DNA of 64,000 nt from Kudoa neothunni (taxonomy: Eukaryota > Animalia > Cnidaria): positions 6,559,731 through 6,623,730 of the forward strand of contig OZ199838.1 of NCBI GenBank assembly GCA_964304625.1, in the 5' to 3' direction. The position numbers and the translations under genes were made by a program. Each line of letters starts with the position of its first letter. Positions within the stretch are counted from its first letter, which is position 1. Of the stretch, positions 1-12,511 are shown one piece after another. A model generated the notes under the pieces. The model was not told the origin of the DNA. It was given only the letters and a program-made list of their open reading frames with translations, and ran no database searches.

Positions 1-3
1 TAG

Positions 4-3000
4 TGCATGATAATCCAAAGTTGTTGAACGAAATGAAAAAAGTTGACAAAAAAGGACTGATAGATAAATGGTTACATAGTTGTTCCAGTAGTGATTTTAT
101 GAGAAAATTTATCGAAGCATCTAGCAAGAAAAACACTAATGGCGATGTGCAATCGAAAAAGTGCGCACTTCCGGACCTGCCAAATGCAATAAACGGCGGG
201 GTGGTGACTAGGTTTCCTCCGGAAGCTTCTGGTTATCTACACATTGGTCACGCAAAAGCGGCTCTTCTAAATCAATTGTACAAAGAAAAGTATAATGGAA
301 AATTGGTGATGCGTTTTGATGATACCAACCCGTCGAAGGAAAATGAGTTATTTGAAAGAATTATTTTAGAAGATATCAAACTGTTGGGTCTCATGCCTGA
401 CCGATTTACCAGAACGTCTGATCACTTTGAGCGACTAATGGAATATGCAAAGCAGATGATTTTATCTGGTGATGCCTTTTGTGATGATACATCAGCGGAA
501 GAAATGAAGAACCAGCGTCTCAATAAGCTCCCCTCAGAATGTCGGAATAATTCTCTCGAAACAAACTTAGAAATGTGGGACCAAATGGTCAAAGGGACTG
601 ACGCCGGTCAAAAATATTGTTTGCGTGCCAAGATCGATTATACCTCTCTTAACGGCTGTATGCGAGATCCCACCATCTACAGATGTAAGCAAGAACCTCA
701 TCTTATCACCAAAGATCGATTCAAATGTTATCCTACCTATGATTTTTCTTGTCCTATTGTGGACAGTGTCGAAAATGTCACTCACGCACTCAGAACATCG
801 GAATATGTAGATCGTGACCAGCAATATTATTGGTTTATCGACAAGTTGAATCTACGTAAACCCACGATATGTTCGTTTAGTCGTCTCAATTTGAAATACA
901 CTTTGATGTCCAAAAGAAAGCTCGCATGGTTGGTTGATAATGGAATAGTTGAGGGTTGGGATGACGCACGTCTTCCAACTGTTAGAGGCTTATTGCGCCG
1001 TGGTTTGGAGTTGGATGCTTTAAGAAGTTTCATCATTTCACAAGGTTTCTCAAAAAATGTCAATAACATGGATCCATCCACCGTTTGGGCGATGAACAAG
1101 CAAATTCTTGAATCTACTGCTCATAGGTTTACAGCTCTCAAATCAGATAGTTTAGTTGAGGCTGTTATCGATAATTTTGATAGTTGTCAAATTGATCGTA
1201 CTGCTCAATTTCCTCTTATCGCCTCAAATTCGGATTGTGGAGTTAAAACAGTGTTCTACAGTAACAATGTTTGGTTGGAAAAAGATGACGTCTCCTGTAT
1301 GAAAGTAAACGATAGAATAACTCTGATCTCCTTGGGCAACGCCATAGTTAAAGAGATTAACGCAAGTGACCAAACAAATAAACCAAAAATTCACTTAGAA
1401 TTATGTCCTCAGGATAAATCCTATAAAGGGACACTAAAAGTTACCTGGTTACCCGTGGAATCATCTTCTGCTAGCATAACAAACGTGAAGTTGGAGATTG
1501 TTTACTATGGTAATATTCTGAAAAAGCCCTCCCTAAATGAATTTGTTAGCTTTGAGGATTCTGTTGAACGCGATTCCGAGTTGATTGTTCCAATGAGAGG
1601 TGAAAGTGCTTTAATGAATGTTCAAGTGGGTCAGAAAATTCAGATTCTACGTAAAGGATTTTTCATTTGTGATAGCATTGTGAAAAGTGGATCCGAGCCT
1701 ATTCTACGTTTGTTTAACATTCCTGATGGTTCTAAAAGTTGTTTCGAGTCAACGACAACAACAACAACAGCTGAACCCACAAAGAAAGTAGAAACTGAGT
1801 CACCTAAATTGAACCCAAAAAATGGTAAGAGTGTGTCAGATGTTGATGAGAAAAACCTCGAAAAGCTTATTATCGAGCAGGGTAACAAGGTGCGAACTCT
1901 AAAATCTGATAAAACCTCCTCACCAGATATCATTAAAGGCGAGGTTGAGAAACTGCTGAATTTGAAGAAAAGTTATGAGCAGAAAACCGGTAAACCTTAT
2001 CAACCTAACAATGGCAGTATTGCCACCAACTCCAAAACATCTGATTCCAAACAATCGCTTAGTGAAGATCACGCTGGTATTTACAATAAAATTACCGACC
2101 AAGGAAATAAGATCAGGCAGCTTAAGTCATCAAAAGCTGAAAAAGAAATCATTGACAAAGAAATTAAGCTACTGCTAGCCATGAAAGAGAGCTTCAAGAA
2201 GGCCACAGGCTTAGAATATAAACCTCCAACTCAGGCGTCAAATCGTTCCACAAATAATTCTAATGTTAAAACAGCTAAAAAAGATTCCAATTCTAAACCA
2301 CCTAAAAAATCTTCTAATGAAACTACAGCAACACCAACAACTAAGAAAGTCACCAAACTTGGACTAGAATTTAAAAAGGAAGATAATTTTAGCAAATGGT
2401 ACTCAGAGTTGATAGTGAAAGGTGGTCTGATTGAATACTATGATATTGGTGGTTGTTATGTGTTACGACCTCAAGCTTATGGCATTTGGGAAATAATACG
2501 ATCATTTATGGATAACGAGTTCAAAAAGCGCGGAGTCAAAAATTGTTATTTTCCCATGTTTGTTAGTAAGGCTGCTCTCAACAAAGAACAACAGCATATT
2601 GAAGATTTCTCCCCCGGAAGTATCTTATTTTTAGTTACTACTCCACTATAATTTGTGTAATCCTTTGGTGTAGGTTGCATGGGTGACCAAATCGGGAAGT
2701 TCAGATTTGCAAGAACCAATTGCTATCCGTCCCACATCAGAAACAGTAATGTATCCTGCTTACGCTAAATGGATTCAATCTCACCGTGATTTGCCGCTCA
2801 AATTGAATCAATGGTGTAATGTGGTCAGGTGGGAATTCAAACATCCAACACCATTCCTACGATCCAGAGAATTTCTATGGCAAGAAGGTCACACAGCTTT
2901 TGCCACAAAAGATGAAGCTGTGGCCGAGGTTTACGATATGCTTGACATATACAAACGAACCTACGAAGAGTTGTTAGCTGTACCGGTCATAAAAGGTCGA

Positions 3001-4078
3001 AAAACCGAAAAAGAAAAGTTTCCTGGTGGCGATTTTACAACAACTGTCGAAGCATACATACCAAACAGTGGTAGAGGAATTCAAGCTGCAACTTCACATT
3101 ATCTTGGTCAAAATTTCTCCAAAATGTTCGAAATTATGTTCGAAGATACTTCCAACAACAAGGTTTATGCTTATCAAAATTCGTGGGGTTTCACTACGAG
3201 ATCCATCGGTGTCTCTATTATGATCCATAGTGACAATAATGGTCTTGTGTTGCCTCCTCGAGTTGCAGATATTCAAGTTGCTATTATTCCTTGTGGTATA
3301 ACATCGACTCTGGAAATCGCAAAAAGAGAACAACTTATTAGCTATTGCAACCGGCTAAACCAACAACTCACTGGGAAAAATATCAGATCCATATTAGACA
3401 CTAGAGATAATTTGTCCCCTGGATGGAAATTCAACCATTACGAGTTGAAAGGAACACCATTACGAGTTGAAATCGGTCCCAAAGAAATGGAAACTTCTAA
3501 GTTTGTTCTATGTAGAAGAGATACACTCGAGAAAGTTATTCATACGTTTAAACGTTTTTGTTTGACGCTTTTTGTTAGAATGTGTTTTCTGATGCAAATG
3601 CTTTTGGTCAGGTTTGTGAGGATATGTTAGAAACAATACAAAATAGTTTGCTTGAAAAAGCGCGCGTTAAATTAAACTGCAACATCGTTGTTGTTGAACA
3701 ATGGGATGGTTTTATGACTAATCTCAACAAAGGAAAAGTGATTTTTTTTTCTTGGTGTTTAGTATATGTCATTCATAGTTACTTTTAACACCTTTCTGTT
3801 TGGATTCCACTTGCGAGACACAAATCAAAGAAAATAGTTCAAAGTAACTTTGATTTTTATTGTGAGGTTGTTCCTATGAATAATTGCGGTTTTTTAGAGA
3901 GGATGCAACAGCTAAGGATGGTGATTCTTCCGACAATGCTGTTGCCGCAACCATGGGTGCCAAAAGCTTGTGTATTCCTTTCGATCAGCCCAAGCCACTT
4001 GAATCTAATACCAAATGCATCAATCCCGGTTGCTCTAAGCGTGCCATCTCTTATGTTCTTTTTGGACGTAGTTATTAA
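4..4078 (+). CDS. EPRS1: Bifunctional glutamyl-prolyl-tRNA synthetase, 5'-partial; GluRS + 2 WHEP repeats + ProRS
   Basis: GluRS motifs [19 protein letters not shown] and MSKRKL; two WHEP repeats ([11 protein letters not shown]..., [11 protein letters not shown]...); ProRS motifs [23 protein letters not shown] and C-terminal FGRSY*. Introns 2620-2673, 3535-3578, 3738-3778, 3844-3897; acceptor TAG at 1-3. One surplus C in the run 2611-2615 breaks the frame at the first junction. Confidence 0.97.
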
Positions 4079-4714
4079 ACTCTTGACTTCTCGTTTGTCT
4101 TACCGCTTAGAGTTATCGTTGACTATTTCTTTTCTATTTTAATGAGATTTTATAGCATTATAATTAAGAATGAAAATATATTAATTAAATATTTTTATTA
4201 CGAAGTTTTATAGTTTATTTCCTAAATTGAGTAAATTAATAATTAAAATCACTTTCTGACATTAATCACATAATGCTTACATCAACGTAGTTTTAATGAC
4301 TTGGATTCAGCTTCATTTTTCATTAATAAAATTGAATTTTAAAAAATAGCGTTTACAGAAATAGGCGAATGAGATAAACATGGATTAGTTATTTCAGAAA
4401 AAGTTCCCCCGAATATCTGTAACATTAAGGTGTATCATTCACGACTTTCTATATACTAGGAAGGCCAACGAATCTATCTCTAATGAGAGGGGATATGGAA
4501 GGTTGTTAGTTTTGATCACAATATCGGACGAAAATAGGTGCGTAATAAGTAATATTTTAATTGCTATTAAATACGACTAACGATAATGGTGATAATATGA
4601 GTACAATCACATAGATGCTAAAAAGCAAAAACACAATTTTCTAACTAAGTCTACTGTTGACGAGTTAATTCCTCGTACGAACTAAAGGGTAAAGAGGCAA
4701 AAATGCTACCAACT

Positions 4715-5818
4715 CTATATTTGGTTCTCATTAAGCGTGAATAAATATCGATTTGGCACATTGCAGAACTGCGACTGATATTCAATAAGGAAATCTTCAA
4801 ATAAGGTTCTAGGTAAGGGTCGTTTGGCTGCACTTTTAAATCTAAACATAACGTGTTCGATGTAGGTGTAGAGTTGATGTTTCAGGTAGTGCTAAATTAC
4901 ATTTAAATTACTATCCGAAGTAAATTATGTGATTTACATCCATATTGGTATTTTTAGATATGTATTGAGTGATAAATTCTCCTAATAAAATGATGTCCTT
5001 GGTGGTGAGAGAACCAAATGTCCTGCACGGAGACCTTTTGCTGGTTCCATATTTTATTTTTTCGTACTGTGTATGATTATATTTTATGTGATCATCAATG
5101 TGAATAATAGTGCCGGGTAAAGTGAAACGGTAGATATTAGCAAGAACATTTTCAACCTCATCTCTGTGAAGTATGCTTAAATGAACCAGGGGTTTCACCT
5201 GATAGGAATCTAATAGGCAGAGTAAAAAACAGTTAACTATTTCAAATTTTTCTTCCTTTTCATCATTTATTATCTAAAACACATTATAATCTACATGGTA
5301 GAGAAACTAATGATATAACCGGCATGTAATAACCAACAGGCAAAATTTTGACAATAACGATTTCATCACTGCCTCCTAGTATTATAGGGTCTCGAATAAG
5401 TGCCCGATGACAAACCTGATTCACTGTTCCCATCACTTCTTCTCCGATCAAATTATTTATCCTTAGGTATTCAACACATTTGGACATATCGGAGCCTATC
5501 GCCCAGAAATAAACAAGGCTGATAAATAATTTCAAAGGAACAGCATTGTCTTCGAATGGAGAATTTATACGTATGGATGAAGCGTGATCACGATTACAAT
5601 TCCAAGAAAAGTGGTCGCTAAAATAGTCATTTTGACATAATAACAATGTTCTGCAAGAGCATCTAAGAAAATGTAAACATTGAACTAAATATTTAAAAAT
5701 ACCTGGCACATTTTTTAGGAGTCTCTAGTAAGTTGACAGCCAAAAGAAAGTAAATTATATCCTTGTTGTTGATAAATATATTTTCCTTGTCGCGTAATAT
5801 GCAACCAAATGATGACAT
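4715..5818 (-). CDS. Intron-containing Merlin/IS1595 (ISXO2-like) transposase-derived protein, 323 aa, probably catalytically inactive
   Basis: Exons 5818-5703, 5662-5320, 5273-4938 and 4891-4715 (972 nt, open throughout); GT-AG introns of 40, 46 and 46 nt. Collinear Merlin-like blocks: CARC...WNCNRDH-SIRINSPF, LVYFWA, PIILGG, LPGTIIHIDD, LYTYIEHVMFR, LFEDFL. An alternative in-frame donor at 5337 is possible. Confidence 0.8.
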
Positions 5819-8167
5819 TAGCTAGTAGTTGTCAATCTAAAGATTTAAAAATTTAAATCTAAGGGGCGCAATAGTTTAAATTCAATAACTCAATAAAAAT
5901 CCAACCAACACCTGTTCAGTCATAGGGACGGCAAAGCAATGCTTAGCAACTAGTTATAAGAAAGAGACATATATGATTTATCTATATTTGGAATAAAATT
6001 GAGAATTTTGATAACCTTCATTTTGAATAAAATTAAATAAAAATCCTATAATTATCTTAACCTATGTAATGAATTGAGAAAGAAAAATTATTGCATACGT
6101 TGGAGAATGAACCATAATGATTTTCTTAAATTAGCGCATGATAATTTGTCACATATATTTCATTTCCCTTATAAAGTTCAGTGGCCCCCCTCTTTTTAAC
6201 AAAATTTAACCCAATACTTGTTAAATTACAGGGATATTCTATATAACACAATTAACGCTACGAAAGGTATATAATAGATCATATGTAATTATATTTACAA
6301 AAATCAAACATGAACTTTTATTCTATACATGGTATTTATAAAATGTTTCAAAAAATAACGTAAATGCTCAGTGAGTCCTTTTTGGTCCAAGTATAAATTG
6401 ATTGAATGAAGTCATTTAATTATTGTAAAGTATTGTTTTATAGTTTATTCAATTAAAGAGGATAACAAATATTTTTTATTTTAATTTTGGGAATACATGA
6501 ATGTAAAATATCCGTAGAGAGTGGGTTTCTTAATATTTAGCTATTCCTGAATTTTTTAATTCTTTGTTTTAAATTGAGATTTTTTGGAACGCAACCGGAA
6601 TTTTAATATATTAAAGATACATTGTTCAAATCATAATACACCAAATTGATAATGAGGTTTGAATAAGCACGATGTAATGATTGATCTTTTTTGGAAATTG
6701 TAAAATATATAAAATAAATTAAACAATAGCGACAGATAATTGGTGCTTTACAACAAATTAAAAAATTTCGATTTCGTTTTTAAGATTCCGTTAAGGGTGG
6801 GCATGGTGAATATGTTAAAATGTTTTACAGTTGCAGATTGGATACCTCTTCTGGGGATATTGCGGAAGTATTATATTTTACACAATCTTTCTGTTATATT
6901 ATCTAATTTTTTTCTGTTTCATTTCATTAACAATTTCCCCCAACAAATATGTCAAGAATATTTGGTTAAAACGCCACTCAAGTGATTAACATTATAAAAA
7001 AATATGAACTTTAATGTATTAATCAAATCTAAATATTTTAATAAATTAATAACAAAAATATTATACAACTACTTTACATTCAACTAATCAACTTGTATCG
7101 CTTTTAAAAAATGCATAAGACTGATCCCTGACTGTGATATTTTTTCATTTATCTACGGAATTGAAAGCTCATAATAAACCCAAAAATAAAAAAATTTTGT
7201 TGTAAAAAATTCTGAAATGTATAATATCGACGGTAATAATAAAAAGATGGATAAATGATTGTTTGAAGAGAAAAATAATCTATAAATCTTAGTGGATTCC
7301 TTAAATTCACCAATGTAAATGATATTTAGATCCTTCAATAAGATTAAGATGTGATAAAAATATTTACATCTCATCTATAAACAAAATAAATACCTCAATC
7401 GTTATATCTTATCCATACGATTCATTGGAAATATCTAGAGAATAAACCATTTGAACATTTCAATTTAAATGAATGAATTTTTGTCACACATTACCATTTA
7501 ATGAGATATCGTTGTTTAGGGGTACAACATAGTGGCTGAAAAAAAGGGATTAACTAACCTTAAAGATTTAAAATAAACTGAAGAAATTTAATTAAATATT
7601 AAAAATACATACATTAAATAATCAAATTATTTATTTAAGTTATATCGATTAAAAAAGTGGATTTGAAAATGTTTTTATTTATTTGAATCAAATTGAATCG
7701 AAGAAATTTACATTATATACTGTAGTGTGGAATTATGGTGTACTGGCAATCATTATATAACTCGATTTAGAATAACAAATAGTTTATTCGTCTATTATCT
7801 GATAAGTCATGATGTAACATTATATTCAACTTATAAATTAACCCATTCGGTCCCATTGTTCGCTGTAGTGAACAAACCATTATTATGGCTACCACGTATT
7901 GAACGTATTTATATAGAAAACCAAAAGTAACTTAAACTGAAGATTTTAGTATTAAGATTGTTAATATTTTTACTTTATATCATATTTAAGAATGGAAAAT
8001 TTTGTATTGAACAATACTTTTTACTAAATACGGATTAAAAAATTGCAATCTTATTCTGTCGATAAAAGTATGTTTCATTTTATAAATAAAACAAATAAAT
8101 ATATATTGTAGATAATTATGGTTAGTTTATTTTATCAAATATTCACATTGATACAATTAGTAAACAA

Positions 8168-9981
8168 ATGCACACAGCTTTAAAAGCATGTGTTCACTAC
8201 GATGAACAACGGGCTCCAACGGAACTAAAATTTCGGATTATAATGGATCACGATTTCAGAGCAACAAGGTCAAACAGTCGAAAAATACAAGTGGAAGTTA
8301 TAGTTCTTCCAGATTCTGTTATTTCAGATCTTGATGTGTATTCTGATGATGAATTTGATCCAATAAAAACCGAAAATGTTGAGGAATTCTCTACTAACTC
8401 GTCAGATGAATCGGCTACTGTGGAAGAAGAAACAGTTGTCAAATGGATTAATGAAGGGCCCTGGATTAAACGACCTGAAAATGTAACCACAGATGAAAAT
8501 TTTGAAGAACTTGACGGTTTTCATGAACCAATAGACTACTTTAATTTCTTCTTTGGCAATGAACTAATGGAACTAATAGTATCGCAATCAAATATCTATT
8601 CCACTCAATTTGGATCGACTTTCCGTACACATGTTGAAGAAATTCAAAAGTTCATCGGCGTTCTTATTTTGATGGGCATCGTTAGGATGCCTCGTTACCG
8701 CTGCTATTGGAGTAAATTCCTGAATTATCCCCCTGTTTCAAATACTTTCTCCAGAATTCGTTTCCAGCAAATCCTCAAATTTTTACATTTTAGTAATAAC
8801 GAAGCTCTTATAACAAATCAAAACTCACCCACTTTCGATCGTTTCGCGAAAATTAGACCTTTTCTTGAGCACCTCAGGATGGCATGCTTAAAAATAACCA
8901 CAGAAGTACACAATTCAATTGACGACGAGAAAATAATTCCTTTTCAAGGAAAATGGAAGGCAAGGCAATACCTCCCGGAGAAACCTTCAAAGTGGGGCTT
9001 CCTAATTTTCGATTGATGCGATGTTAGTGGCATCGTGTATGACTTTCACATTTATGATGGAAAAACACCCACGGTTGCGCAAAGATATGGTCTAAACTCA
9101 GGAGACTTCGTTGTTAAACTATCCGAAACTCTTCCAACTTCAAATACATATTTCCTCTATTTTTGACAACTACTTTACTCCTGCCTCACTACAAGTGTTT
9201 TTAAAAACCCAAAATATTTACTCAGTTGGTACAATTCGAAGAAATAGAATAAAAAATTTCTCTTCAACTCCCGCAAAGATATTCGAGAAAAATGGTCATG
9301 GAGTGTATGAAAGAGCGCAAGATCTTCATCAAGGTATTGTGTTATCTCAATGGTGTGATGGCTTAGTAGTTATATTTCCCCCAACGTATTCTTCTTTGGA
9401 ACTCAGTCTCAGGGTAAGGAGATTTGATAAACGTCTCAAACGAATAGTTAATGTTGAGTGTCCTAATGTTGTTTCTGAATACAACAAAAACATGGGGGTG
9501 TCGATCTATCAGATATGCCGACGGCATTGTATATATTAGAGCATAAATCTTTAGCGTTTTACATGAAAATTTTCATTTGGGGTCTAAATACAAGCCATTA
9601 TTAATTCATGGCTGCTATATCACAGAAACTACGTCGTACGAAAGACGCCCGGAAAGGAAATGAAAGACTTGTTATCATTTACAGAATCCATATGCGAATC
9701 ACTCATCTGTTATAAAAACGGGTAGTAATATCAAAGCGAGGTCGACCAAGTCTGGATGTGTGTGAAGATTATGATGTCATTTATTGCCAAAAACGTCAAA
9801 AAAATAATGTACTATCAGATTCTATTAGATTTGACAATGTTGGTCATTACCCTACGATGAATGAATAAAAAAATAGGTGCCGTCTATGTAAAAGGAACTC
9901 ACAGTTCGCATGTGTAAAATGTATGCAACTTGTTGCATTGTTAAAGGAAGGAACTGGTTTTATGATTTCCATGTAAAATAA
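8168..9981 (+). pseudogene. Disrupted piggyBac transposase of element 1
   Basis: SIDDEKIIPFQG, QYLPEKPSKWGF, FDNYFT, YNKNMG, IRFDNVGH and a Cys-rich C-terminus, split by frameshifts and stops (ORFs 8168-9016, 9111-9539). Confidence 0.9.
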
Positions 9982-10022: not shown

Positions 10023-12511
10023 CCCTCCAACGGATGAAAAAACGACCACCCTCCAACGGGCTTTGGGGTAAAAAAGACCCCAGATTTTTTTTAATTTAAT
10101 GTATGCAGAAAATTATTATAAACTTATGAGGGCAATATGGGAAAATTCTGCCTAAGTAACGCTGAGAAAATAATCAATTACTTCATAATTAATCTCAGTA
10201 ATCCTCTTCGGCAAGATTAAGCAGATATCGCGATAAATCGTTTTTATAACGTATAATATGTTTAGTCTTATTTGAAATAATGAAAAATAACATTTTAGCA
10301 AAAAATAAAAGATAAAATATTTTCAAGGGTCCCTAATAAATTTGGTTTATATTAGCTAGCAATTTAGACATTTATTTGACGAATGGGCGCGACAGTAGAA
10401 ACTTCCACATTTTGAGCATTTGGATGAGGTTTTCTTATCGTTTTCACGAGGACAATGTTCACATCTTCGTTTAGAAGTATTTGAATCTGCAAAGTTGTAT
10501 GTTTCCATAGAAGTTGGATGAGATCTTTTTGAACCTTTTTTCATTTGGGAATTTCTCTCCAAAAGAGGTTTATACAACTCTCCAGCCATTTCTTTCAGAA
10601 AATCACGTCTCAATTTTGTGGAATCGTTAAATATGTTGTTTATATAGACAAAATGAATTTATCAAAGTCAAATCCAACATATTATAAAAGACCACCATGG
10701 GCCAGCGTCGATTAAATCTGCGGACCGAAACGGAAGCCAACATCCGATCCACGTATCTACTCCTCCTTTGGAACCATTATAATCCACTATTGTTTCAGGC
10801 TTTTGTTTATGTGTATCGTTGGTTATGTTGGTGTTGGTTGTTCCTGAGGATAGGAGAATCACTGCTCTTCTTTTTTTGTTGACATATGAAGTGATCATAT
10901 ATTTATCAAAAAATATAAACATAGTGCTGAATAAGGAACGATTTCTAGACGGAAGAACACACGGTGGTAAATCTCTCTTATTGTGTCGAATTGTTCCAAG
11001 ATATGTCAGACGTTTTGTCTAACAGCTTCTCGGCTAGTCTAAGGGAAGAGAAAAAATTATCTGCAACTATAGTTCTTCCTGAGTTATACAAGGGAGCTGT
11101 AAGGGAAAGCACAATATTCTCACCAACACCACAGTTTTGGCTAGCTTGAGTTCCGTTCTTTCCTAGATAGGGAGAAATGTTTACAACATATTTGTGGACT
11201 GGATCGACAGCTAGGAAAAACTTTAGGCCATATTTCGCCGGCTTCATCGGCATATATTGTCTAAATGAGTATCTTCCTCTAAACGAGACTAACTGCTCGT
11301 CAACGGTAACATTTTCACCGGGGAAAAAACATATAGGTAGAGTCTGGATCCACATGTTCCATATGTTGCGAATTGGACAAAATTTATCCAATTCTCTTCT
11401 TTCAGATCTGGTGCTTGGATTATCAAAATGAATACATCGTAGAATTTGGCGAAAACGATTAAATGAAAAGATTTCGCGATACATCTCTCTCCCTTCCTTT
11501 ATACTAAACATTTCTAAAAGAGGTTGCTCTCTGTCTTTGTAGACAGCCATCAAAATTAGTGTTCCGAAAAATCCTCTTAATTCAACGTCGTCTAAATCAT
11601 TCCATAAATCAGAAAAGTGTAATTTCCCGTGAACGTTTGTTTGTTTTATTATTTCCTGGCAAATTTCATCAGTGAAGAATATAAAAAAACAGTCCAACAC
11701 GTTTTTGACTCTTTGTATGCAATAAGCTGTTGGCCCAGGTCGAGGATTCATGATATTCTCCTTCAGCATTTTTGATGGAGGTGGCTTATTCAATGTCCAA
11801 AGTATTCCGCTTTTGCTTGTCGTAGAATCCGCAGGATGTTCGCAATCTGATGTATCATCGGATTCTTCGGAATATTCAAGAACGGTTTCATCAATGTCGC
11901 TACTTAAAGGTTGATATTCATCGCTAAAAATCCTCAGATGGTGCCATGATTATCTCAATGTGCGCAACAAACGATAAATTTGGTGTATATTTCGCGTTAA
12001 CTCTCATATACGGTCCTAAGGCTTAAATTATCTATAGCTTATTTTGTAGGGGATTATTTATTGCTAGTACACGGAGGTAATATGTTAATTTTGTTTGTAT
12101 TTAGCTAATAAACATTGACCTTGCGGTATTCATATAAACGATGGTTACGATATGTTGCGATTACATACTTAATCGGATTACGGCGGATTATATTGATTAA
12201 TAATTGCTGAATTTGACAGTATTTATTAGGCAGATTTTTTTTTAAATTTCCAAATCATCTTATAATAATTTTCTACATACGTCAAATCAAAAAAAATCTG
12301 GGGTCTTTTTTTACCCCAAAGCCCGTTGGAAGATAAAAATTTTGTTCGATAAGAAATAATCAATATTCCACATAAAGATTTTTATAAATCTATTTATTAA
12401 AATAATTTAGGAGAATAGACGAAATTTCAAGTATCCCAGATAATTATAAAATATTCTATGGACAAATTAAAATCGTTTTGGGGTCTAAAAGACCCCAAGC
12501 CCGTTAGAGGG
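10023..12511 (-). mobile_element. piggyBac element 2 (PGBD4-like), nested antisense in the 3' non-coding part of element 1
   Basis: TTAA at 10019-10022 and 12512-12515; TIRs CCCTCCAACGG / CCCTCTAACGG; GGGGT-N7/8-ACCCC palindromes at 10065, 12300 and 12480. Confidence 0.93.
10356..11947 (-). pseudogene. Frameshifted piggyBac transposase of element 2
   Basis: VTVDEQLVSFRGR, QYMPMKPAKYGLK, ADNFFSS, DYNGSKGGVD and C-terminal CEHC...CSKC...CRAH...CLNC across ORFs 10978-11793, 10668-10922 and 10356-10613; start approximate. Confidence 0.92.

What the first reader, a model, noticed from the sequence alone, without database searches (positions are those of the whole stretch)
4715..5818. Intact four-exon gene built from a Merlin/IS1595 transposase with a degenerate active site: candidate domesticated transposase
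Seen: three GT-AG micro-introns (5663-5702, 5274-5319, 4892-4937) join four fragments into one uninterrupted 323-aa ORF; the ORF track shows only two of the pieces in the correct frame. Every other cut-and-paste transposase in the window is riddled with stops, and I found no TIR/TSD around this one. Known: Merlin/ISXO2-like transposases have an N-terminal Zn ribbon ending SIRxxSxF, then LGG..V(Q/E)IDES, PGTxIxSD.W, NxIE..W and YLxEFxWR. Here the Zn ribbon (CARC...CNRDH) and scaffold are retained, but the first D is lost (LGGSDEIVIVKIL), the NxIE motif is unrecognisable (TTKDIILLG), and only the second D (IIHIDD) remains. Inference: a host gene exapted from Merlin as a DNA-binding regulator or TE repressor. 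To my knowledge domesticated Merlin genes are poorly documented in animals.
Basis: partly seen in the sequence, partly recalled or inferred. Interest (0 to 1): 0.8.

Follow-up and report, generated by a model that had tools for sequence, protein, structure and literature searches.

The report
Single-copy gene tamed from Merlin transposase
A single-copy, four-exon gene in a small animal genome descends over its whole length from a Merlin jumping-gene enzyme, carries lysine in place of the first cutting residue, and has stayed intact in three very diverged relatives. It is most likely a transposase tamed into a host DNA-binding protein, which is rare for Merlin in animals.

Summary
On the minus strand, exons 5818-5703, 5662-5320, 5273-4938 and 4891-4715, joined across GT..AG introns of 40, 46 and 46 nt, give 323 codons plus a stop.

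Two relatives from other samples have the same layout: L006 (partial) and L052 (complete). Their introns have other lengths (39/48 and 35/35/37 nt), so the frames fit only after splicing.

Synonymous sites are saturated (pS 0.73-0.87) while pN is 0.13-0.28.

Pfam finds nothing in the window's exons. Three-species profiles of each exon do match an alignment of Merlin transposases, in collinear order (exon 2 E 6.6e-12; exons 1, 3 and 4 beat 150, 150 and 149 of 150 shuffles).

The first catalytic Asp is Lys in all three relatives and the second Asp is kept. A conserved Glu sits at the usual spacing, but it cannot be aligned with confidence.

The gene is single-copy among at least 503 Merlin matches in the genome. 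It has no TIRs, whereas a true Merlin copy shows perfect 26-nt TIRs.

Expression and synteny could not be tested, and the joined protein was neither searched nor folded.

Verdict: a domesticated Merlin transposase (about 0.75). Its function as a DNA binder is inferred.

The scan notes other tamed-transposase candidates in this genome, but not this gene.

The parts
5703..5818 (-). Exon 1 (116 nt, 38 codons plus 2 nt). It encodes the N-terminal helix region and the first Cys of the zinc ribbon. The protein starts MSSFG in all three relatives.
   Evidence: The three-species profile matches Merlin alignment columns 97-127 with score 20.7; 0 of 150 shuffles reach that score.
5663..5702 (-). Intron 1, 40 nt, GT..AG, phase 2. 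It splits the CxxC knuckle.
   Evidence: The same site carries a 39-nt intron in L006 and a 35-nt intron in L052.
5320..5662 (-). Exon 2 (343 nt). It encodes the zinc ribbon, a three-helix DNA-binding-type domain, and the first strand of the catalytic core (GG..IVIVKIL).
   Evidence: Local Merlin HMM, 27.6 bits. hhalign E 6.6e-12. 27 library hits, and the full-length ones carry PF12762. Model pLDDT 77; its nearest Atlas models are IS1595/Merlin clusters.
5584..5710 (-). Zinc-ribbon ligands CxxC ... Cx3H. They span intron 1 and are conserved in the window, L006 and L052.
5347..5349 (-). Lys codon in the column of the first catalytic Asp of Merlin (IVQIDES against IVIVKIL). It is Lys in all three relatives.
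5274..5319 (-). Intron 2, 46 nt, GT..AG, phase 0.
   Evidence: The intron is 48 nt in L006 and 35 nt in L052.
4938..5273 (-). Exon 3 (336 nt). [quoted passage not shown]
   Evidence: hhalign score 25.1 on Merlin columns 265-302; 0 of 150 shuffles reach that score. Exon 3 of the relative L052 gives PF12762 as its only Pfam hit, at 14 bits and E 0.053.
5094..5096 (-). Second catalytic Asp, retained (HIDD, HIDD and RTDN in the three relatives).
4977..4979 (-). Conserved Glu of LGEF, a possible third catalytic residue. It lies +39 residues from the second Asp (as in P0008) and +13 from a conserved Phe.
   Evidence: Spacing counted. The alignment at this point is not confident.
4892..4937 (-). Intron 3, 46 nt, GT..AG, phase 0.
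   Evidence: The intron is 37 nt in L052.
4715..4891 (-). Exon 4 (58 codons plus the stop). It is the best-conserved part (76% identity to L052) and corresponds to the C-terminal SYLxEFxWR helix of Merlin.
   Evidence: hhalign score 19.3 on columns 349-382; 1 of 150 shuffles reaches that score.
5878..5908 (-). A 31-nt upstream motif, 60-90 nt before the ATG. It is the only stretch of the flanks conserved with L006 and may be a promoter element.

Best explanation
This is a host gene domesticated from a full-length Merlin (IS1595-like) transposase. It keeps the ancestral architecture in collinear order: an N-terminal helix, a CCCH zinc ribbon, a three-helix domain of the DNA-binding type, an RNase-H-like core and a C-terminal helix.

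The first metal-binding Asp has been Lys since before three lineages split. A protein like that should bind DNA but should not cut and paste it.

Shown here: the ancestry, the exon structure, the single-copy state, the absence of TIRs, the Lys substitution and long-term purifying selection.

Inferred: the protein works as a sequence-specific DNA-binding factor. It may bind Merlin-type ends, as a repressor of the genome's very large Merlin population or as a transcription regulator. The strongly conserved C-terminal part would serve multimerisation or partner binding.
For: Gene model:
- Open exons and GT..AG introns.
- Identical exon boundaries in L006 and L052, with intron lengths 40/46/46, 39/48 and 35/35/37 nt. 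The genomic frame relations therefore differ between the relatives, yet every spliced frame closes.

Selection:
- Window against L006: pN 0.13, pS 0.73, differences by codon position 33:32:101, Fisher p 1e-40.
- Window against L052: pN 0.28, pS 0.87, all 319 aligned codons open.

Ancestry:
- Exon 2 against the genome's own Merlin copies: E 2e-7.
- A local HMM of 18 intact Merlin ORFs scores exon 2 at 27.6 bits, against a best of 7.2 bits among 800 shuffles.
- A library-wide profile search gives 27 hits, and the roughly 300-aa ones carry PF12762 directly after the matched part.
- Three-species exon profiles match Merlin collinearly.
- Exon 3 of L052 gives PF12762 as its only Pfam hit.
- The nearest Atlas models to the exon 2 model are IS1595/Merlin and IS1-type zinc-ribbon clusters.

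Not a transposon:
- One DNA copy and no decayed copy in 40 Mb.
- Both flanks are unique for 349 nt and at least 515 nt.
- No TIR, whereas the control Merlin copy in L045 has perfect 26-nt TIRs starting with GG.
- Lys stands at the first Asp in all three relatives.
Against: - There is no RNA evidence. The RNA runs with the same species label held no read of this organism, not even on EPRS.
- Both relatives lie on contigs of 1.1-1.3 kb, so orthology by synteny is untested.
- According to the scan's notes, transposons in this genome often carry host-type micro-introns, so the introns alone do not mark a host gene.
- Pfam does not recognise the window's protein, searched exon by exon.
- The matches of exons 1, 3 and 4 are weak on their own (E 0.005-0.017).
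- The joined protein was not searched or folded, so the RNase-H fold of the C-terminal half is not shown. The exon 3 model has pLDDT 46.
- Purifying selection between species is also expected for an active transposon lineage.
Confidence: 0.75

Rival explanations
1. It is the transposase gene of a very low-copy, intron-bearing Merlin family that still moves or moved recently, perhaps spreading between related parasites. Its ends were missed because they are short or diverged.
For: The scan's notes say that this genome holds pogo, piggyBac, Tc1 and Merlin elements with host-type micro-introns. Merlin is extremely abundant here. Purifying selection between lineages also fits an active element. 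The relatives' contigs are too short to show their ends.
Against: There is one copy and no decayed copy or fragment in 40 Mb. No inverted repeat was found between the unique flanks, whereas the same tool finds perfect TIRs on a real Merlin copy. The first catalytic Asp is Lys in all three lineages. An element with a dead transposase should not stay under selection to synonymous saturation.
Confidence: 0.12
2. It is a domesticated Merlin protein that is still an enzyme. With Lys-Asp-Glu in place of Asp-Asp-Glu, it would cut or rearrange DNA for the host instead of only binding it.
For: The second Asp is invariant. A conserved Glu lies at the spacing of the catalytic Glu. The core and the C-terminal helix are the best-conserved parts. 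Ciliate DDE_Tnp_IS1595 genes proposed as domesticated keep complete triads (PMC9942806).
Against: It is established knowledge that the first Asp of RNase-H-like transposases binds the catalytic metal, and here it is Lys in all three relatives. The HTNxIE motif is not recognisable, and the Glu cannot be aligned with confidence.
Confidence: 0.08
3. It is an untranscribed relic, or an ORF that is open by chance.
For: There is no RNA evidence and no Pfam hit.
Against: Three independent sequences diverged to synonymous saturation all keep the four frames, the splice sites, the start and the stop. pN/pS is 0.18-0.42 even when uncorrected.
Confidence: 0.03

Closest known systems
Merlin superfamily transposases (eukaryotic IS1595/IS1016-like; Pfam DDE_Tnp_IS1595, PF12762)
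   Same: The architecture is collinear over the whole length: an N-terminal helix, a zinc ribbon ending in SIR..S.F, a helical domain, LGG followed by a beta strand, the second Asp in G(S/T)IIH.D, and a C-terminal Y(I/L).E...(W/F)R helix. The size is the same (323 aa against 300-408 aa).
   Different: It scores below the Pfam threshold. The first Asp is Lys. The HTNxIE motif is lost. It has no TIRs starting with GG, no 8-9 bp TSD, one copy and three introns (Merlin features from PMC8101967).
Merlin-related ORFs proposed as domesticated in Stentor, Symbiodinium and Perkinsela (PMC8101967), and DDE_Tnp_IS1595 genes of Blepharisma (PMC9942806)
   Same: They are preserved ORFs without TIRs or TSDs. 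In some the triad is not conserved. Domestication is inferred from the preservation.
   Different: Those are protist genes that Pfam still recognises. This one is in an animal genome, is far more diverged, carries introns, and is supported by a three-lineage test of selection.
Catalytically impaired domesticated transposases in general (for example CENP-B from pogo; own knowledge), and the dead Tc1-derived host gene noted in this same genome (s1-687415)
   Same: They are single-copy host genes that keep a transposase DNA-binding head and fold while losing catalytic residues.
   Different: The source superfamily differs (Merlin). No extra host domain is fused. The function is unknown.
Transposase-derived repressors such as the P-element KP protein (own knowledge)
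   Same: This is the proposed mode of action: a non-cutting protein with the transposase's DNA-binding domain competes for the element ends.
   Different: KP is encoded by defective elements, not by a fixed host gene. Binding of this protein to Merlin ends is untested, and its DNA-binding domain is only about 27-30% identical to those of the resident Merlins.

Membership tests
Merlin transposon (autonomous element) | DDE_Tnp_IS1595 (PF12762) domain above Pfam's gathering score | tested here: not met
   The window's exons give no hit at E<=10. Exon 3 of the relative L052 scores 14 bits against a cut-off of 27. The search was exon by exon only; the joined protein was not scanned.
Merlin transposon (autonomous element) | Homology to Merlin transposases along the protein | tested here: met
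   exon 2 E 6.6e-12; exons 1, 3 and 4 match collinearly and score above 150, 150 and 149 of 150 shuffles.
Merlin transposon (autonomous element) | Complete DDE catalytic triad | tested here: not met
   The first Asp is Lys in the window, L006 and L052. The second Asp is present. The Glu cannot be placed with confidence.
Merlin transposon (autonomous element) | Terminal inverted repeats starting 5'-GG, with 8-9 bp target site duplications | tested here: not met
   No such pair lies within 3500-7500 or between the unique flanks. The positive control L045 has perfect 26-nt TIRs starting with GG.
Merlin transposon (autonomous element) | Repeated copies in the genome | tested here: not met
   There is one locus by DNA, by exon proteins and by exon profiles, against at least 503 PF12762 candidates elsewhere.
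Domesticated transposase (host gene) | Intact relatives in other species under purifying selection | tested here: met
   L006 (78% aa identity in exon 2) and L052 (50-76% per exon). pN is 0.13-0.31 with pS 0.73-0.87.
Domesticated transposase (host gene) | Same chromosomal neighbourhood in related species | not testable with these tools
   The relatives' contigs are 1142 and 1260 nt long. Two scans of the metagenome contigs found nothing more.
Domesticated transposase (host gene) | Transcribed and spliced as a host gene | tested here: inconclusive
   RNA runs X5-X7 laid no read even on EPRS. X3 is DNA. Splicing is supported only indirectly, by the conservation of frames across three intron-length sets.
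IS1595-type N-terminal zinc ribbon plus HTH DNA-binding domain | Zinc-ribbon ligands and a helical domain like those of IS1595/Merlin transposases | tested here: inconclusive
   CxxC...Cx3H is conserved. The model has three strands and three helices at pLDDT 77. Atlas neighbours carry PF12762, PF12760 or PF03811 at TM 0.54-0.66, but the model's alignment contained Merlin sequences. No PDB match reached E<=0.001, and there was no Pfam hit.

The most novel reading that the evidence does not exclude
An animal lineage has fixed a Merlin-derived protein, cutting-impaired but still able to bind DNA, that recognises Merlin ends and holds down the genome's more than 500 Merlin copies. That would be a host-encoded, transposase-derived repressor. 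An unchecked scan note takes the lineage for a myxozoan fish parasite. It would be the first documented Merlin domestication in Metazoa with a defined role.
Probability: 0.2. Interest if true: 0.7.

Novelty: new member of a known kind. Interest (0 to 1): 0.5.

Why it matters
Domesticated transposases are a well-known source of new DNA-binding proteins. For Merlin, however, only tentative protist cases are on record in the papers I could search, and none in animals.

This case comes with an unusually clean argument from sequence alone. Three lineages diverged to synonymous saturation share the exon structure and the Lys at the first catalytic position. The same genome still teems with intact Merlin elements that have perfect ends.

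That pairing makes two questions directly testable. Does a tamed transposase police its own superfamily? How does a transposase fold evolve once cutting is lost?

Tried and rejected
- Pfam on each exon of the window gave nothing.
- The word search with exon 3, and with P0002, found no further relatives.
- The ESM Atlas feature search with exon 3 scored 0.87 or less with unnamed viral clusters, which is uninformative.
- The single-sequence HMM and hhalign runs of exons 3 and 4 scored no better than shuffles. Only the three-species profiles rose above them.
- The fold of exon 3 alone has pLDDT 46. I did not use it for a fold search. Its strand-strand-helix-strand-helix-helix order fits an RNase-H-like core but carries no weight.
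- Foldseek against the PDB with the exon 2 model found no match at E<=0.001. The weak top rows are HTH DNA binders.
- The RNA runs with the same species label contain no read of this organism.
- Two scans of JGI metagenome contigs found nothing.
- The nematode SL1 leader is absent from the genome, so I dropped the guess that this is a nematode.
- L057, noted by the scan as a Merlin with micro-introns, showed frame breaks, one with a gap of about 250 nt and one without a gap. It could not tell me whether the candidate's introns were inherited from an intron-bearing element.
- L051, the other candidate domesticated Merlin (s1-712037), is an intronless 305-aa ORF close to ordinary Merlin copies and is not kin of this gene.
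- The sigma-70 promoter scan is irrelevant for a eukaryote.
- The only joined operation was a count of length and stops inside a script.

Full report
**Observation.** I read the minus strand of 4400-6200. The four proposed pieces translate without stops. The three gaps between them are 40, 46 and 46 nt long, begin with GT, end with AG and are AT-rich (GC 0.17-0.26, against 0.33-0.38 in the exons). The exon lengths (116, 343, 336 and 177 nt) add to 972 nt, that is 323 codons and a stop. An in-frame TAG lies 6 nt before the ATG. The gene lies tail-to-tail with a bifunctional Glu/Pro-tRNA synthetase gene on the plus strand, which marks the genome as an animal's (own knowledge). The assembly has three contigs of 17.2, 12.0 and 11.0 Mb plus one of about 18 kb.

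**A rule I followed.** I did so. The joined 323-residue protein was not scanned, searched or folded. The only joined operation was the count of length and stops, and nothing joined was printed, saved or sent to a tool.

**The gene model is backed by two relatives.**
- A word search with exon 2 found P0001 (78% identical). It lies on a 1142-nt metagenome scaffold, L006.
- A profile search of 1.84 billion representatives found P0002, which lies on a 1260-nt Logan contig, L052.
- L052 carries the complete gene, with exons of 116, 343, 339 and 177 nt and GT..AG introns of 35, 35 and 37 nt.
- L006 carries exon 1, exon 2 (12 nt longer) and half of exon 3, with introns of 39 and 48 nt.
- The three sets of intron lengths fall in different classes mod 3. 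The genomic frame relation between neighbouring exons therefore differs from one relative to the next, yet every spliced frame closes. Without RNA, this is the best available evidence that the junctions are used.

**Selection.**
- Window against L006, over 215 codons: pN 0.13 and pS 0.73, with differences by codon position of 33:32:101.
- Window against L052, over 319 codons: pN 0.28 and pS 0.87.
- Synonymous sites are saturated, so the split is old and the protein has been kept throughout.
- Exon 4 is the best-conserved part (76% identity to L052).
- The flanks do not align, apart from a 31-nt motif 60-90 nt upstream of the ATG that is shared with L006.

**Ancestry.**
- Pfam finds nothing in the window's exons, even at E<=10.
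- Exon 2 nevertheless matches the genome's own Merlin copies (E 2e-7 pairwise). Those copies carry PF12762.
- The genome holds at least 503 PF12762 candidates, many with intact ORFs of 300-408 aa.
- An HMM built from 18 of these ORFs scores exon 2 at 27.6 bits and exon 1 at 8.8 bits, in collinear order. The best of 800 shuffles scores 7.2 bits. Exons 3 and 4 score no better than shuffles.
- A two-sequence profile of exon 2 gives 27 hits at library-wide E<=1e-3. All five of the roughly 300-aa hits that I scanned carry PF12762 directly after the matched part.
- With three-species profiles, each exon matches an alignment of 23 Merlin transposases, and in collinear order. Exon 1 falls on columns 97-127 (score 20.7; 0 of 150 column shuffles reach that score). 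Exon 2 falls on columns 126-230 (E 6.6e-12). Exon 3 falls on columns 265-302 (score 25.1; 0 of 150). Exon 4 falls on columns 349-382 (score 19.3; 1 of 150).
- Exon 3 of L052 gives PF12762 as its only Pfam hit, below threshold at 14 bits and E 0.053.

The whole protein is therefore a much-diverged Merlin transposase. It is not a fusion, and it is not only a DNA-binding head.

**Catalytic residues.**
- In the column of the first Asp (Merlin IVQIDES), the three relatives read IVIVKIL, IVVAKIL and ILISKVI. All have Lys.
- The second Asp is kept in all three (HIDD, HIDD, RTDN) and is aligned by hhalign.
- The HTNxIE motif is not recognisable, and no confident alignment covers that stretch.
- Even so, a conserved Glu (LGEF) lies +39 residues from the second Asp in the window and +41 in L052, and +13 from a conserved Phe. 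The catalytic Glu of the Merlin protein P0008 has the same spacings (my count).
- My reading of the triad is Lys-Asp-(Glu?).

**DNA-binding half.**
- The zinc ligands CxxC...Cx3H are conserved and are split by intron 1.
- A model of exon 2, built on 26 sequences, has pLDDT 77, with three strands and three helices.
- Its nearest Atlas models are clusters carrying DDE_Tnp_IS1595, Zn_ribbon_IS1595 or Zn_ribbon_InsA, at TM 0.54-0.66. This is not independent of the sequence result, because Merlin sequences were in the alignment.
- The PDB gave no significant match.

**Host gene or transposon?**
- The scan's notes say that pogo, piggyBac, Tc1 and Merlin elements of this genome often carry host-type micro-introns. 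The introns therefore do not decide the matter.
- Copy number does bear on it. There is one copy by DNA, by each exon's protein and by exon profiles, and no decayed fragment.
- The flanks bear on it as well. They are unique for 349 nt upstream and at least 515 nt downstream.
- No inverted repeat lies between the flanks. As a control, the same tool finds perfect 26-nt TIRs starting with GG around an intact Merlin ORF in L045.
- The Lys at the first catalytic position is shared by three lineages that have since diverged to saturation. An element with a dead enzyme would not be kept that long.

**Not tested.**
- Expression could not be tested. The three RNA runs with the same species label laid no read even on EPRS, and run X3 is DNA.
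- Synteny could not be tested, because the relatives' contigs are too short. Two metagenome scans found no more relatives.
- The fold of the C-terminal half remains open. The exon 3 model has pLDDT 46.

**Context from papers.** Merlin elements have TIRs of 24-462 bp with terminal GG and TSDs of 8-9 bp. Preserved Merlin ORFs without ends have been proposed as domesticated in Stentor, Symbiodinium and Perkinsela (PMC8101967), and DDE_Tnp_IS1595 genes likewise in Blepharisma (PMC9942806). My searches found no animal case.

**Context from the scan.** A scan note takes this genome for the fish parasite Kudoa neothunni; I did not test that. The record name of L006 may point to codfish gut metagenomes (PMC7054092), but I could not tie the sample to that paper.

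**Verdict.** This is a domesticated Merlin transposase, with confidence of about 0.75. I expect it to bind DNA and not to transpose. A role in restraining the resident Merlins is a testable guess. It is a new member of a known kind.

Noticed in passing
window 6167-6679 (weak second arm about 7040-7480): One arm of a repeat of about 513 nt, with at least 50 copies in the genome at 72-77% identity. Elsewhere the copies often sit as inverted pairs 380-900 nt apart, which suggests a long-TIR or foldback-type element. It ends 349 nt upstream of the gene and is not part of it.
   Followed up: partly
G000 genome-wide; L007-L050: There are at least 503 PF12762 (Merlin) candidates in 40 Mb, and all 150 that were scored lie above Pfam's cut-off. 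Many are intact ORFs of 300-408 aa. L045 is a 1074-bp element with perfect 26-nt TIRs starting with GG, nested inside a second pair of inverted repeats.
   Followed up: partly
L003 1906-1908 and L004 1417-1419: Two Merlin copies about 1.7 Mb apart share a single in-frame stop at the same codon, between ...SIWIV and GMDENG, in an otherwise open transposase frame.
   Followed up: no
L051 1543-2460 (G000:C1, about 5.1 Mb beyond the window): This is the scan's other candidate domesticated Merlin (s1-712037). It is an intronless 305-aa ORF with Gly, Glu and Glu at the triad positions. It is close to ordinary Merlin copies and is not a relative of the gene studied here.
   Followed up: partly
window 8168-9539 (+) and 10356-11793 (-): piggyBac-like ORF pieces in several frames. 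Given the scan's notes on intron-bearing transposons in this genome, some of the breaks may be introns, not decay.
   Followed up: no
window 3-4140 (+): A Glu/Pro-tRNA synthetase gene with almost no introns: one 882-codon open stretch followed by a short gap near 2651-2683.
   Followed up: no
L057 (G000:C1:8545900-8549900), minus strand 1543-2353: A Merlin copy whose match to the Merlin HMM is split over three frames. One break has a gap of about 250 nt and one has no gap. It looks more like decay than like two clean micro-introns.
   Followed up: partly
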